From Octopus sinensis (lineage: Eukaryota), in assembly GCF_006345805.1 (NCBI RefSeq), contig NW_021837040.1:24096-88095 (forward strand): 64,000 nt of DNA, written 5' to 3'. A program made the position numbers and the translations under genes. Within the stretch, counting starts at the first letter, position 1; every line of letters begins with the position of its first letter. Of the stretch, positions 22,147-61,727 are shown piece by piece. Under the pieces are notes generated by a model. It did no database searches and had not been told where the DNA came from. It saw only the letters and a list, made by a program, of their open reading frames with translations.

Positions 22147-22316
22147 CTTCATTGATATCTTCACTTGTGATGTTTTCTAGTTGTTGAGTGATCCCCTCTG
22201 TATTGTAACACTGAGACATGTCTGGTTCTTTCCAGACACCAGTGAATGGTGAACATTTTGGTGATTTCACATATTGACTTGTTGGCATTTCGGAATATTC
22301 CATCTTTCCGGAAGAA
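22147..22316 (-). CDS. aGPCR HormR exon 2 (CSSGKMEY...[31 protein letters not shown])
   Basis: 170 nt, phase 2-1, gtttcag|T...G|gtgagc; completes ATRHC...W..PD.S.C. Confidence 0.88.
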
Positions 22317-61300: not shown

Positions 61301-61727
61301 TGTACGTTGTTTGCCGGCGGTTGTCCATCCTGTGTCTGTTTGCTGTGGTGGTCTGGTATATAGTGGGTAGTCCCACCTGCGGGCTTGGGTTTGATGAAGC
61401 CAGGTCAGCTGCTGTACAATCTTTTGTGCCATGCACAAAAAAGATTGTTGCTCAGCAGCTGCTCTTTCGACAAATATATATATATATATATATATTTGCA
61501 TTGAATTATCACACACTCAATAACACATTTTCGACAGAGATTGATAGTAGAGGTAAAGGGCAGGTAAGGGAGATTAAAATGACGTATGAGTAGGTATTGC
61601 ATATTAAAACCTATATCGTCAATGAAATACTATAAACAAGTCTGATTCAACTTACAGAGTTGTTAAACTGGAGAGATTTTGGAATATTTCTGCCTTCATT
61701 TCTTTGATATCATTAAAACTCAAATTC
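22147..61727 (-). CDS. Multi-exon ectodomain of an adhesion-type GPCR: 6xLRR - LRRCT - Ly6/uPAR (LU) - SEA-like - HormR. Gene is 5'-incomplete in this window.
   Basis: 14 exons with AG/GT boundaries and matching intron phases join into one ORF of 1463 nt. Order: 61656-61727, 57357-57428, 53986-54057, 53003-53074, 47126-47197, 45406-45477, 43630-43799, 39915-40006, 37552-37735, 35010-35101, 31511-31563, 30750-30904, 26181-26295, 22147-22316. Confidence 0.88.
22700..23440 (+). mobile_element. Decayed mariner (DD34D-type) transposase
   Basis: [20 protein letters not shown]...KVMASV; [10 protein letters not shown]; PCSPDL. Confidence 0.75.
23966..26101 (-). mobile_element. Non-autonomous Helitron retaining the Rep/Hel N-terminus with STPR-like 23-aa repeats
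   Basis: On the minus strand: 5' A|TCTCTCTATAAG at 26101; 3' ccgggcaacgccggg hairpin + CTAG|T at 23966. ORF 24062-25090 has [23 protein letters not shown] repeats followed by AFNYN. Confidence 0.85.
26181..26295 (-). CDS. aGPCR HormR exon 1 ([37 protein letters not shown])
   Basis: 115 nt, phase 1-2, tttttcag|TG...TG|gttcgt; C...GTFHWP.T..G....PC hormone-receptor motif. Confidence 0.88.
26379..30420 (+). mobile_element. Composite Helitron-like element: two tandem ~1.8-1.9 kb units (26379-28161, 28162-30062) plus a short complete Helitron (30063-30420)
   Basis: Each unit starts A|TC(TC)T...ATAAA; the block ends cccgagcaacgccggg...CTAG|T; units 1 and 2 are near-identical. Confidence 0.75.
30750..30904 (-). 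CDS. aGPCR exon, end of SEA-like module ([14 protein letters not shown]...[10 protein letters not shown])
   Basis: 155 nt, phase 2-1, atttcag|C...A|gtaagt. Confidence 0.85.
31511..31563 (-). CDS. aGPCR small exon ([18 protein letters not shown])
   Basis: 53 nt, phase 0-2, attgcag|ATG...GG|gtaagc; exactly bridges the phases of its neighbours. Confidence 0.8.
31630..32710 (+). mobile_element. CR1-clade LINE reverse transcriptase fragment
   Basis: GPD...NYRPISLTS...QHGFR...YLDFSKAFD...SGVPQG; FADD; RDLGV. Confidence 0.9.
35010..35101 (-). CDS. aGPCR exon, start of SEA-like module ([30 protein letters not shown])
   Basis: 92 nt, phase 1-0, ttccatag|GC...GCT|gtgagt. Confidence 0.82.
36689..36923. 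mobile_element. Possible LTR (TG...CA) with an upstream PBS-like TGGCGACC near 36307
   Basis: Termini tgttgtaac / gtcgtaaca; no clear PPT or coding sequence. Confidence 0.3.
37552..37735 (-). CDS. aGPCR LU-domain exon 2 ([11 protein letters not shown]...[18 protein letters not shown])
   Basis: 184 nt, phase 0-1, gttacag|CCT...G|gtcagt; CCxxxxCN terminal LU signature. Confidence 0.9.
37876..38742 (+). mobile_element. Non-autonomous Helitron
   Basis: A|TCTTTATATATATAAAAC 5' end; gacccg-gcaacga-cgggtc hairpin; CTAG|T 3' end; same family as 150-700 and 755-2300. Confidence 0.85.
39469..39750 (+). mobile_element. tRNA-derived SINE
   Basis: A/B boxes; near-colinear with 43163-43462 and 52395-52690. 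Confidence 0.8.
39915..40006 (-). CDS. aGPCR LU-domain exon 1 ([30 protein letters not shown])
   Basis: 92 nt, phase 1-0, tgcatag|AT...GAG|gtaaat; LxCxxC start typical of Ly6/uPAR domains. Confidence 0.85.
41398..42955. mobile_element. Cluster of SINE copies (one + at 41398-41780; two - at about 42215-42955) with internal microsatellites
   Basis: ggcgcaggagtggctgtgtggtaag head and cgtctaccaaatccactcacaaggc body are repeated. Confidence 0.78.
43163..43462 (+). mobile_element. tRNA-derived SINE nested in another SINE
   Basis: Flanked by the duplication cctcaagaggatg (about 43149 and 43478). Confidence 0.78.
43630..43799 (-). CDS. aGPCR LRRCT exon ([20 protein letters not shown]...EGEC...EYSQCK)
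   Basis: 170 nt, phase 2-1, attgcag|T...A|gttagt; xLxxN...CxCxL...C...C LRRCT pattern. Confidence 0.88.
44250..44700 (-). mobile_element. RTE-clade LINE 3' fragment
   Basis: [22 protein letters not shown]. Confidence 0.75.
45252..45350. repeat. Short 26-bp tandem repeat, about 4 copies (tttgatgacatcttttcatgattttag)
   Basis: Directly visible just downstream of the LRR exon at 45406. Confidence 0.8.
45406..45477 (-). CDS. aGPCR LRR exon ([24 protein letters not shown])
   Basis: 72 nt, phase 2-2, cttctag|A...AT|gtatgt; visible inside ORF 45234..45494. Confidence 0.85.
47126..47197 (-). CDS. aGPCR LRR exon ([24 protein letters not shown])
   Basis: 72 nt, phase 2-2, gttacag|A...CT|gtaagt. Confidence 0.9.
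47415..47805 (+). mobile_element. Dimeric SINE fragment (reverse copy at about 63190-63600)
   Basis: gtcgactttgcctttcatc...gggtcgataaattaagtaccag occurs twice. Confidence 0.75.
48735..51850. repeat. 108-bp purine-rich minisatellite, about 29 copies
   Basis: Unit gacaaaaataggacaaaaaatagtgtctgcagaaagaagccgaaaaagaagaaaaag...gaagaacaagacgaaaagaggagatgaa; explains ORFs 48050-52000. Confidence 0.93.
51914..52228 (+). mobile_element. tRNA-derived SINE
   Basis: ggcgcgtggcttagtggttagg...gttcgatttcc head. Confidence 0.8.
52395..52690 (+). mobile_element. tRNA-derived SINE
   Basis: Colinear with 39469-39750. Confidence 0.78.
53003..53074 (-). CDS. aGPCR LRR exon ([24 protein letters not shown])
   Basis: 72 nt, phase 2-2, gttacag|G...TT|gtgagt. 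Confidence 0.9.
53270..53500. repeat. (GAA)/(GGA) trinucleotide tract
   Basis: Directly visible. Confidence 0.9.
53986..54057 (-). CDS. aGPCR LRR exon ([24 protein letters not shown])
   Basis: 72 nt, phase 2-2, ttttgcag|G...CT|gtaagt. Confidence 0.9.
54630..55500 (-). mobile_element. Second decayed copy of the same Tc1/mariner family
   Basis: [29 protein letters not shown]...VWQQD in ORF 54112-54960; N-terminal piece in ORF 55034-55270. Confidence 0.8.
56100..56358. repeat. Near-perfect ~260-bp palindrome
   Basis: Centred on ttggaaggcagactgccttccaa; the arms carry the gactgctatttc motif also seen at 1-15 and near 4710. Confidence 0.9.
57357..57428 (-). CDS. aGPCR LRR exon ([24 protein letters not shown])
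   Basis: 72 nt, phase 2-2, ttttacag|G...CT|gtaagt. Confidence 0.9.
57755..58030. repeat. Imperfect ~275-bp fold-back
   Basis: aatgaaaatttaaattataccatttagaaaaattacatat ... reverse complement at 57960-58005. Confidence 0.8.
58237..61480 (-). mobile_element. CR1-clade LINE, near-complete but frameshifted ORF2 (APE endonuclease + RT) with an (ATCA)n tail
   Basis: ALTETHL...GGVAMY...GDFNLP; LSDHNMI; [15 protein letters not shown]; [14 protein letters not shown]; tail at 58237-58270. Confidence 0.92.
61656..61727 (-). CDS. aGPCR LRR exon ([24 protein letters not shown])
   Basis: 72 nt, phase 2-2, ttgacag|G...CT|gtaagt, LxLxxNxI LRR consensus. Confidence 0.9.

What the first reader, a model, noticed from the sequence alone, without database searches (positions are those of the whole stretch)
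22147..61727. Hidden adhesion-GPCR ectodomain combining LRRs with a three-finger (Ly6/uPAR) domain and a SEA-like module
Seen in sequence: 14 tiny exons over 40 kb splice in frame to LRRx6 - LRRCT - LU (12 Cys, LQCQTC...CCIGNLCN) - SEA-like - HormR, with a class-B/adhesion 7TM exon downstream on the same strand. Established: vertebrate LRR-bearing aGPCRs (ADGRA2/3) have LRR-Ig-HormR, and LU domains occur mainly in small secreted or GPI-anchored proteins, snake toxins and TGF-beta receptor ectodomains. I do not know of an aGPCR with this combination. Inference: a lineage-specific, domain-shuffled receptor, possibly for recognition or sensing, that ORF-based annotation would miss.
Basis: partly seen in the sequence, partly recalled or inferred. 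Interest (0 to 1): 0.82.

Follow-up and report, generated by a model that had tools for sequence, protein, structure and literature searches.

The report
Octopus adhesion-GPCR ectodomain exons, already annotated
The 14 small exons are real and encode the outer part (leucine-rich repeats, a Ly6/uPAR-like cysteine module, a SEA-like module, a hormone-receptor module) of one member of a large octopus-specific adhesion-GPCR family. The gene is already in RefSeq under a misleading name, receptors of this kind have been reported before, and this copy is incomplete in the assembly.

Summary
On the minus strand, 14 exons (61727 to 22147) all have AG/GT splice sites and join into a 487-codon frame with no stop. 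Residues 10-387 equal the first 378 residues of the RefSeq model 'SLIT and NTRK-like protein 4 isoform X4 [Octopus sinensis]'. The scaffold length ties that model to this locus.

The Octopus vulgaris ortholog (850 aa, 'ADGRG6-like') continues into GAIN/GPS and 7TM.

Domain calls:
- LRR x6 and LRRCT are solid.
- The 12-Cys module is very probably an LU domain. All 12 Cys of a paralog align with human LYPD1/Lynx2, which is the best PDB hit for three queries. All 8 paralog exons hit Pfam UPAR_LY6_2. Every score is sub-threshold, and two AlphaFold runs gave no confident fold.
- SEA-like and HormR are supported only weakly.

Three corrections:
1. The locus is not hidden.
2. The window lacks a 25.7 kb segment carrying the nine GAIN-GPS-TM1-4 exons, holds only the TM5-7 exon, and is cut at its 5' end by the scaffold end.
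3. The family (at least 40 copies) matches a published octopus-specific aGPCR expansion, and LU-bearing GPCRs are reported in starfish, molluscs and arthropods.

Verdict: a new member of a known kind, of modest interest.

The parts
61656..61727 (-). LRR exon a (72 nt, split codon 2 bases in / 2 bases out). First exon of the gene still inside the window.
   Evidence: AG/GT sites and frame. P0004 begins at the Met inside this exon. The ortholog exon at L001 5942-6013 differs by 1 nt.
57357..57428 (-). LRR exon b (72 nt, same phase).
   Evidence: AG/GT. Included in P0004. No ortholog exon in O. vulgaris L001.
53986..54057 (-). LRR exon c (72 nt).
   Evidence: AG/GT. Identical to L001 8968-9039.
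53003..53074 (-). LRR exon d (72 nt).
   Evidence: AG/GT. Matches P0003 residues 1-32 at 100%. Identical in L001.
47126..47197 (-). LRR exon e (72 nt). Used in P0004, skipped in the O. vulgaris model P0003.
   Evidence: The ortholog exon is intact at L001 14281-14352.
45406..45477 (-). LRR exon f (72 nt).
43630..43799 (-). LRRCT cap exon (170 nt).
   Evidence: The AF2 model is confident here, and Foldseek matches Slit2, Nogo receptor and VLR LRR-plus-cap structures. Five nt and four aa differences from O. vulgaris cluster here.
39915..40006 (-). LU-like module, exon 1 (Cys 1-4, 'LQCQTC').
   Evidence: Identical in O. vulgaris.
37552..37735 (-). LU-like module, exon 2 (Cys 5-12, ends 'CCIGNLCN').
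   Evidence: Pfam UPAR_LY6_2 E=0.086. All 8 paralog copies hit UPAR_LY6_2, best E 0.006. PDB hit LYPD1 6zss E=0.29. At least 40 paralog copies in the genome.
35010..35101 (-). SEA-like module, exon 1.
   Evidence: Predicted strand then helix.
31511..31563 (-). SEA-like module, exon 2.
30750..30904 (-). SEA-like module, exon 3. The three SEA-like exons form a unit with one split-codon base on each side and are skipped in frame in P0003.
   Evidence: E-H-E-E-H-E topology at pLDDT 61-83. Pfam SEA E=0.0072 for the equivalent segment of P0062.
26181..26295 (-). HormR exon 1.
   Evidence: Pfam HRM E=0.018..
22147..22316 (-). HormR exon 2. Its donor leaves 1 base of a split codon.
   Evidence: Five nt differences from O. 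vulgaris.
13399..14671 (.). TA/TG microsatellite tract that stands in place of 25.7 kb of the O. vulgaris ortholog (L001 48948-74666). That segment carries the nine exons for GAIN, GPS and TM1-4.
   Evidence: Colinearity breaks here. TRF result. Exon map of L001. No copy at 97% or above elsewhere in the genome.
9464..9842 (-). Last coding exon: TM5-TM7, C-tail and stop codon.
   Evidence: Pfam 7tm_2 E=1.2e-9, profile positions 148-250 of 250. 98% identical to P0003 residues 725-850. The acceptor needs 2 carried bases, so a direct splice from HormR exon 2 is out of frame.

Best explanation
The region is the ectodomain-encoding part of one gene of an octopus-specific, much-duplicated family of subfamily-G-like adhesion GPCRs. 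The full architecture is signal peptide - LRRNT - LRR(n) - LRRCT - LU (Ly6/uPAR-like, 12 Cys, Lynx2/LYPD1-type framework) - SEA-like - HormR - GAIN/GPS - 7TM.

Shown here: the exon chain, its identity with a RefSeq model, its orthology to an O. vulgaris gene that continues into GPS and 7TM, and the size and taxonomic restriction of the family.

Inferred mechanism, from established aGPCR biology. The LRR horseshoe and the LU module bind a partner on another cell, in the matrix or in cis. The SEA-like and HormR modules act as a stalk. The GAIN domain cleaves itself at HL|T (the ortholog has 'CDHL|TSFAVLM'). Ligand engagement or pulling on the N-terminal fragment exposes the tethered agonist TSFAVLM, which activates the 7TM core and G proteins.

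Exon design. Every LRR is a 72-nt exon with the same split-codon phase on both sides. The SEA-like unit has matching phases on both sides. Repeat number and the SEA module can therefore vary in frame, either by exon gain and loss or by splicing. Existing models differ in exactly these exons.

In this particular assembly the gene is incomplete. The scaffold ends inside the LRR region, and 25.7 kb with the GAIN-to-TM4 exons is missing. This is most likely an assembly defect or a recent deletion. It explains why NCBI named the remainder 'SLITRK4-like'.
For: - Exon chain with 14/14 AG-GT sites and a 487-codon open frame; 378/378 identity to P0004.
- The window is colinear with the O. vulgaris locus L001 at about 97-99% DNA identity. 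P0003, encoded there, has LRR_8 (2e-11), GPS (1e-13) and 7tm_2 (4e-30).
- Exons are more conserved than the locus as a whole: 14 differences in 1.89 kb. The LU, SEA-like and HormR-1 exons are identical.
- Full architecture in one uninterrupted 1155-aa ORF on a 4.2-kb sequencing-run contig.
- A family profile matches ADGRG2 (2e-92) and ADGRG6 (1.5e-85) best over GAIN-7TM.
- LU evidence. Eleven Cys are invariant and one is conserved in at least 90% of 16 homologs. All 12 Cys of paralog P0053 align one-to-one with the 12 Cys of human LYPD1. LYPD1 is the top or near-top PDB hit for three separate queries, with E=0.0056, 0.087 and 0.29, and ACVR1 comes next with E=0.03-0.05. UPAR_LY6_2 is hit by 8 of 8 paralog exons and Activin_recp by 3 of 8. 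NCBI named paralog P0055 'ly6/PLAUR domain-containing protein 1-like'.
- SEA evidence: E-H-E-E-H-E topology at pLDDT 61-83 and Pfam SEA E=0.0072 across the profile for P0062.
- Family size: at least 40 scored copies of the LU exon and of the GPS exon.
- P0022 (LRR + GPS + 7tm_2 + Death domain, O. bimaculoides) matches the description of 'group 3' in PMC6408891.
Against: - No LU, SEA or HRM match reaches Pfam's curated cut-off.
- Two AlphaFold2 runs gave pLDDT 28-54 across the LU segment, and Foldseek returned only LRR and LRRCT matches.
- An LRRCT-plus-LU profile found nothing in the PDB, and the LU segment of P0062 alone also found nothing.
- In the window itself no GAIN, GPS or TM1-4 exon exists, so the 'receptor' status of this copy rests on orthology.
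- No read-level transcript evidence for O. sinensis was available.
Confidence: 0.85

Rival explanations
1. In O. sinensis this locus really has lost the 25.7 kb segment. It would then encode only a secreted LRR-LU-SEA(-HormR) protein, a soluble decoy or binding protein, and no receptor. That is what the RefSeq model P0004 depicts.
For: The scaffold has no N run and joins the flanks through 1.27 kb of TA/TG microsatellite. The missing exons occur nowhere else in the 2.72 Gb assembly above 90-94% identity. P0004 ends after the SEA-like module. A direct splice from HormR exon 2 to the last exon is out of frame and stops after 26 codons.
Against: The stranded downstream exons (HormR 1 and 2, TM5-7) are still open with intact splice sites. 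They differ from O. vulgaris by 0, 5 and 2 nt, which is not what long-standing loss of function predicts. The locus sits on an 88-kb unplaced scaffold that also breaks off inside the gene, and the junction is a microsatellite, a typical site of assembly collapse. The last 4 residues of P0004 could not be found in the window or in the 20 kb of scaffold next to it.
Confidence: 0.15
2. The 12-Cys module is not a three-finger (LU) domain. It would be some other small disulfide-rich fold that happens to share a CCxxxxCN ending.
For: No Pfam LU family reaches its cut-off, and only one PDB E-value falls below 0.01. AlphaFold2 did not produce a confident fold with 16- or 33-sequence alignments. An LRRCT-plus-LU profile found no PDB match.
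Against: Among 177,635 PDB sequences and 24,736 Pfam families, the hits that recur across independent queries are all from the LU superfamily: LYPD1, ACVR1, UPAR_LY6_2, Activin_recp. The LYPD1 alignment runs end to end with 12 of 12 Cys in register, including the N-terminal C-x-x-C and the C-terminal CC-x4-CN. The alignments given to AlphaFold2 held only close paralogs, which is known to limit it. PMC13719153 also reports low-quality LU prediction inside its full-length LU-GPCR model.
Confidence: 0.12
3. The architecture is an annotation chimera. An LRR/LU gene and a neighbouring aGPCR gene would have been fused by gene predictors.
For: Many database models of the family are fragments of either the LRR-LU type or the LU-GAIN-7TM type. 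The O. vulgaris and O. sinensis models of this very locus disagree.
Against: P0062 is one uninterrupted 3,468-nt ORF on a 4.2-kb contig from a sequencing run. It spans signal peptide to C-tail with LRR_8, GPS and 7tm_2. Eleven database models of the family carry both the LU Cys pattern and a GPS motif. All split-codon phases match across the modules.
Confidence: 0.03

Closest known systems
Octopus-specific adhesion-GPCR expansion, 'group 3' of Ritschard et al. 2019 (PMC6408891)
   Same: Octopus-restricted class-B2 receptors with GPS and 7TM. [quoted passage not shown] The genes are clustered, show signs of positive selection, and are expressed in axial nerve cord, suckers and skin.
   Different: In the parts of that paper I searched (0 occurrences of 'Ly6'), no LU, SEA-like or HormR module is mentioned and the exon design is not described. 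Here at least 40 genomic copies are seen, against 21-22 proteins there.
ADGRG6 / GPR126 (and ADGRG2)
   Same: Best PDB matches over GAIN-7TM. ADGRG6 has the same membrane-proximal order SEA - HormR - GAIN - 7TM (papers found; the domain order itself is from my own knowledge). The tethered-agonist motif is T-x-F-[AG]-V-L-M. The NCBI name of the family is 'ADGRG6-like'.
   Different: ADGRG6 carries CUB and PTX at the tip. The octopus family carries LRRNT-LRR-LRRCT-LU instead. No SEA or furin cleavage motif was seen by eye. Orthology was not tested by a tree.
ADGRA2/ADGRA3 (GPR124/125), the vertebrate LRR-bearing aGPCRs
   Same: N-terminal LRR block with an LRRCT cap, followed by HormR, GAIN and 7TM.
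   Different: They have an Ig domain where this family has LU plus SEA-like. The 7TM/GAIN of the octopus family is closest to subfamily G, not A. The LRRs were therefore probably acquired independently.
Human LYPD1 / Lynx2 (PDB 6ZSS), a GPI-anchored single-LU modulator of nicotinic receptors
   Same: Same 12-Cys framework, aligned 12 of 12. Best PDB hit for three queries.
   Different: LYPD1 is a small stand-alone GPI-anchored protein. Here the module is an internal domain of a multi-domain receptor. The similarity is statistically borderline.
LU-domain GPCR-like proteins of starfish (LyAr2; PMC11595613) and of molluscs and arthropods (PMC13719153)
   Same: A 7TM receptor with an LU domain in the N-terminal ectodomain. 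The domain legend of that paper's architecture figure includes LRR, GPS and 7TM GPCR. The starfish LU is also reported as closest to Lynx2.
   Different: The figures and supplements were not readable here, so I cannot say whether the octopus family or the SEA-like/HormR modules are shown. The authors suggest independent origins in different phyla.
SLITRK4 (the RefSeq name of the locus)
   Same: Extracellular LRR block with an LRRCT cap.
   Different: SLITRKs are single-pass proteins with two LRR blocks and no LU, SEA, HormR, GAIN or 7TM. The name is an artefact of the truncated scaffold.

Membership tests
Adhesion GPCR (class B2) | 7TM domain of the secretin/adhesion type | tested here: met
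   Window exon 9842-9464: Pfam 7tm_2 E=1.2e-9, TM5-7 only. Ortholog P0003: E=3.6e-30 over the full profile.
Adhesion GPCR (class B2) | GAIN domain with a GPS autoproteolysis motif directly before TM1 | tested here: inconclusive
   Present in the ortholog P0003 (GPS E=1.2e-13, 'HL|T' motif) and in the relative P0062. The exons are absent from the window and from the rest of this assembly at ortholog-level identity.
Adhesion GPCR (class B2) | Long multi-domain extracellular region with adhesion-type modules | tested here: met
   P0004: LRR_8 E=5.8e-36. Foldseek matches to Slit2, NgR, LRRTM2 and VLR.
Ly6/uPAR (LU, three-finger) domain | Conserved cysteine framework: N-terminal L-x-C-x-x-C, at least 8-10 Cys, C-terminal CC-x(3-6)-C-N | tested here: met
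   Twelve Cys, 11 invariant and 1 conserved in at least 90% of 16 homologs. All 12 of a paralog are in register with human LYPD1.
Ly6/uPAR (LU, three-finger) domain | Significant match to a curated LU family model | tested here: not met
   UPAR_LY6_2 best E=0.006 at 13-20 bits against a cut-off of 31.5. Activin_recp E=0.021. The hits are consistent (8 of 8 paralogs) but below threshold.
Ly6/uPAR (LU, three-finger) domain | Three-finger beta-structural fold | tested here: inconclusive
   Two AF2 models gave pLDDT 28-54 in this segment. Only the loop-II hairpin was predicted. Foldseek returned LRR hits only.
SEA domain | Alpha/beta sandwich of about 100-120 aa (beta-alpha-beta-beta-alpha-beta) | tested here: inconclusive
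   AF2 secondary structure E-H-E-E-H-E at pLDDT 61-83. Pfam SEA E=0.0072, profile positions 3-100 of 106, 16.9 bits against a cut-off of 26.4, on the distant relative P0062. No PDB sequence hit. No isolated-domain fold search was possible.
SEA domain | G|S-[VI]-V-V autoproteolysis motif (present in cleaving SEA domains only) | tested here: not met
   Read from the sequences: no such motif between the second and third strands. If this is a SEA domain, it is a non-cleaving one.
HormR (HRM) domain | Match to the HRM model or its Cys/Trp framework | tested here: inconclusive
   HRM E=0.018 (window exon), 0.063 (P0062) and 0.092 (P0001), all below the cut-off of 26.2 bits. PF02793 is on record for paralog P0005.
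ADGRA2/3 subfamily | LRR - Ig - HormR - GAIN order and a subfamily-A 7TM | tested here: not met
   No Ig module. The closest 7TM/GAIN structures are ADGRG2 and ADGRG6.
SLITRK family (RefSeq name) | Two LRR blocks, a single TM helix, no GPCR part | tested here: not met
   One LRR block followed by LU, SEA-like and HormR modules. The ortholog has GPS and 7TM.

The most novel reading that the evidence does not exclude
The octopus LRR-LU adhesion GPCRs could form a diversified surface-recognition repertoire, with at least 40 genes, cassette-like 72-nt LRR exons and an optional SEA unit. Their Lynx2-type LU module might engage the expanded nicotinic-receptor-like chemotactile receptors of suckers, or mediate skin/sucker self-recognition. 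That would couple Ly6-type nAChR modulation to G-protein signalling. Nothing here tests this. It rests only on the LYPD1 resemblance, the published expression in suckers, skin and axial nerve cord (PMC6408891), and the exon design.
Probability: 0.07. Interest if true: 0.75.

Novelty: new member of a known kind. Interest (0 to 1): 0.3.

Why it matters
For annotation: a RefSeq 'SLITRK4-like' gene of Octopus sinensis is really the truncated ectodomain of an ADGRG-like adhesion GPCR. The truncation comes from an 88-kb unplaced scaffold that ends inside the gene and lacks 25.7 kb of it. Copy counts and names for this family in O. sinensis are therefore unreliable.

For biology: the result adds detail to a known octopus-specific receptor expansion. 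The detail is a Lynx2-type LU module, a SEA-like plus HormR stalk like that of ADGRG6, and symmetric 72-nt LRR exons that allow in-frame variation. It also offers testable ideas about what these receptors, expressed in suckers, skin and nerve cord, might recognise. It is not a new class of receptor.

Tried and rejected
- Single exons against Pfam gave only weak hits, so the exons had to be spliced or matched to relatives.
Reading stops as residues and scoring only the exon region worked.
- The genome search with a whole protein failed twice. DNA and pattern queries worked.
- A relaxed tblastn for the missing GAIN-TM4 exons found nothing in the window.
- AF2 of P0004 followed by Foldseek gave only LRR hits.
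- AF2 of the short LRR-LRRCT-LU protein P0074 with 33 sequences left the LU segment at low confidence, and Foldseek was uninformative for it.
- Profile A3 against the PDB was swamped by 7TM and LRR hits.
- Profile A4 (LRRCT plus LU) against the PDB gave no hits.
- The LU segment of P0062 alone gave no hit. Its SEA-like segment gave no meaningful PDB hit.
- The exon for the last 4 residues of P0004 (DHKE) was not found in the window or in the 20 kb of scaffold next to it.
- The organism of run SRR21372857 could not be identified. Its DNA has no match in the O. sinensis genome.
- The supplements of PMC13719153 are not held.
- Rejected idea: that the scaffold is a haplotig of a chromosomal copy. 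The next-best copies are only 92-95% identical.

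
Full report
**What is there.** The window is AT-rich eukaryotic DNA full of microsatellites and transposon remnants. On the minus strand, 14 short exons (53-184 nt) lie between 61727 and 22147. Every one has an AG acceptor and a GT donor. Joined, they give a 487-codon frame without a stop. The order is six LRR exons, one LRRCT exon, two exons for a 12-Cys module, three for a module of about 100 aa, and two for a HormR-like module.

**It is not a chance chain.** A search restricted to the second Cys-module exon found three Octopus vulgaris proteins named 'adhesion G-protein coupled receptor G6-like' (P0001-P0003). 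It also found a 382-aa Octopus sinensis RefSeq protein, 'SLIT and NTRK-like protein 4 isoform X4' (P0004).
- P0004 comes from a contig of 88,095 bp. The window is the last 64 kb of a scaffold of exactly that length in a 2.72-Gb, 13,516-contig genome.
- Residues 1-378 of P0004 equal residues 10-387 of my spliced product.
- So the genome is O. sinensis, and NCBI's pipeline already joins these exons in the same way.

**Orthology.** P0003 is encoded at O. vulgaris OX597839.1:15.05-15.14 Mb (L001). The window's minus strand is colinear with L001 at about 97-99% DNA identity.
- Thirteen of the 14 exons, plus the TM5-7 exon, have intact orthologs there, with 14 nt differences in 1.89 kb.
- The LU, SEA-like and HormR-1 exons are identical.
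- Of the 14 differences, 12 are nonsynonymous and 2 synonymous. They cluster in a loop of the LRRCT and in the second HormR exon. The numbers are too small for a selection test.
- LRR exon b has no counterpart in L001.
- L001 has two further LRR exons upstream of the point where the O. sinensis scaffold ends.

**The receptor part.** P0003 continues through nine more exons (L001 50366-73798) encoding GAIN, GPS ('CDHL|TSFAVLM') and TM1-4, and then a last exon.
- In the window only the last exon is present, at 9842-9464 (TM5-7; 7tm_2 E=1.2e-9).
- Colinearity breaks between window 13398 and 14672. A 1.27-kb TA/TG microsatellite stands there in place of 25.7 kb of L001.
- Relaxed tblastn finds none of the nine exons in the window.
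- The best copies elsewhere in the genome are 90-94% identical and lie on the scaffold of the closest paralog.
- Splicing HormR exon 2 straight to the last exon is out of frame.
- The remaining downstream exons are still intact, the scaffold is small and unplaced, and the junction is a microsatellite. I therefore think an assembly defect or a very recent deletion is more likely than an old loss. This was not decided here.

**The family.**
- The ectodomain of P0002 finds 47 proteins, all from O. vulgaris, O. sinensis or O. bimaculoides. Most are named ADGRG6-like, and some fragments are misnamed slit, TLR5, chaoptin or LRRC15.
- At least 30 of the 48 proteins then in hand (the 47 hits plus P0004) carry the 12-Cys pattern, and one has three in tandem.
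- The LU exon and the GPS exon each have at least 40 scored copies in the genome. They sit in clusters on contigs C27, C29 and C8 and on many small scaffolds.
- An exhaustive phmmer search of 1.84 billion representatives with the LU exon found only 22 hits. Every named one is Octopus.
- One unnamed hit, P0062, is a 1155-aa uninterrupted ORF on a 4.2-kb contig of run SRR21372857. It has a signal peptide, LRRNT, LRRs, LRRCT, the Cys module, the SEA-like module, HormR, GPS and 7TM. Its DNA has no match in O. sinensis, so it comes from another species. It shows the whole architecture in a single reading frame.
- A family profile is closest to ADGRG2 and ADGRG6 over GAIN-7TM.
- P0022 (LRR, GPS, 7tm_2 and a Death domain, O. 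bimaculoides) fits the description of the octopus-specific 'group 3' adhesion GPCRs of Ritschard et al. 2019. That group has LRRs in 5 of 22 members and a Death domain in one, is expressed in axial nerve cord, suckers and skin, and shows branches under positive selection (PMC6408891).

**Is the Cys module an LU domain?** The evidence in favour:
- It starts L-Q-C-Q-T-C and ends C-C-x4-C-N. Eleven Cys are invariant and one nearly so across 16 homologs.
- The window exon alone hits Pfam UPAR_LY6_2 at E=0.086. All 8 paralog exons tested hit it (best 0.006), and 3 hit Activin_recp.
- Against all PDB sequences the window exon's third-best hit, and the only one with its cysteines in register, is human LYPD1/Lynx2 (6ZSS, E=0.29).
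- The paralog P0055, which NCBI itself named 'ly6/PLAUR domain-containing protein 1-like', hits 6ZSS at E=0.0056 over the whole chain and ACVR1 at 0.05.
- P0053 hits 6ZSS with all 12 Cys in register.
- An exon profile hits the ACVR1 ectodomain at 0.031.

The evidence against: none of these passes a curated threshold. Two AlphaFold2 runs gave low confidence for the segment, so Foldseek could not test the fold. I rate the LU assignment at about 0.8-0.85.

**SEA-like and HormR.** The 100-aa module is predicted as strand-helix-strand-strand-helix-strand at moderate confidence. The equivalent segment of P0062 gives Pfam SEA as its only hit (E=0.0072, nearly full profile). No autoproteolysis motif is present. 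HormR matches are also sub-threshold. The order SEA-HormR-GAIN-7TM is that of ADGRG6.

**Exon design.** All six LRR exons are 72 nt long with two split-codon bases carried in and out. The SEA-like unit is flanked by one split-codon base on each side. The two models of this locus differ by exactly such units: P0003 skips LRR exon e and the SEA-like unit, and P0004 keeps both. O. vulgaris lacks LRR exon b. In-frame variation by splicing or by exon gain and loss is therefore possible. Whether it is used remains an inference.

**Comparison with the literature.**
- LU domains in GPCR-like proteins were reported for the starfish Asterias rubens, where LyAr2 is closest to human Lynx2 (PMC11595613).
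- In 2026 they were reported for molluscan and arthropod genomes, in a figure whose legend lists LRR, GPS and 7TM GPCR (PMC13719153).
- The figures and supplements were not available to me, so I cannot say whether the octopus family itself is shown.

**Verdict.** The claim that the receptor is hidden and unprecedented is not. The useful new points are these:
- the misnaming of the RefSeq gene;
- the two truncations of the locus in this assembly;
- the Lynx2-type Cys framework;
- the ADGRG6-like stalk;
- the symmetric exon design.

I file it as a new member of a known kind, with interest about 0.3.

Noticed in passing
window 48737-51851: A purine-rich 108-bp satellite of 28.5 copies (84% matches) fills most of the intron between LRR exons d and e. 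It produces the extreme GC and AT skew seen in the composition profile and very long spurious ORFs in several frames.
   Followed up: partly
window ~26790-30000: A tandem duplication with a period of about 1.9 kb (copies 97-99% alike) lies in the intron between the SEA-like and HormR exons. The O. vulgaris locus has one copy, because L001 31746-33203 aligns twice. The HormR exon itself is not duplicated.
   Followed up: partly
window 58116-61101 (minus strand): A LINE-like retroelement with an Exo_endo_phos endonuclease (E=2.7e-6) and RVT_1 (E=1.5e-8) sits in the intron between LRR exons a and b. It is absent at this site in O. vulgaris, but copies lie elsewhere in L001 (64455-67453 and 68427-69833).
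   Followed up: partly
window 31573-32789 (plus strand): A reverse-transcriptase ORF (RVT_1 E=8e-19) lies on the strand opposite the gene, directly beside SEA-like exon 2.
   Followed up: partly
window 24065-25147 (minus strand): A 361-aa open frame with STPR repeats (Pfam STPRs E=5e-13) lies inside the intron between the two HormR exons, on the same strand as the gene. It was not tested whether this is a nested gene or a transposon remnant.
   Followed up: no
window 5337-6827 (minus) and 7573-8513 (plus): Two long ORFs encode near-identical protein segments in opposite orientation, an inverted duplication of an element downstream of the gene. A similar ORF pair lies at 20852-22069, right next to HormR exon 2. 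No Pfam match at E<=0.001.
   Followed up: partly
window 57357-57428: LRR exon b is used in the O. sinensis RefSeq model but has no counterpart in the O. vulgaris locus, which is about 1.3 kb shorter there. This is a presence/absence difference of a whole repeat between sister species or assemblies.
   Followed up: partly
P0004 C-terminus; window and L012/L013: The last four residues of the RefSeq model (…NM-DHKE) are not encoded after SEA-like exon 3, where the window reads …NM-ELFDE. No matching terminal exon was found in the window or in the 20 kb of scaffold next to it.
   Followed up: partly
G000:C2135:6913-7871: A tandem array of 141-bp units, each matching 72 nt of the LU exon, lies just before a full copy of that exon on another scaffold.
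   Followed up: no
P0018 (O. sinensis) and P0022 (O. bimaculoides): One family member has three LU-like modules in tandem after its LRRs. Another has a C-terminal Death domain (E=3e-6) after the 7TM.
   Followed up: partly
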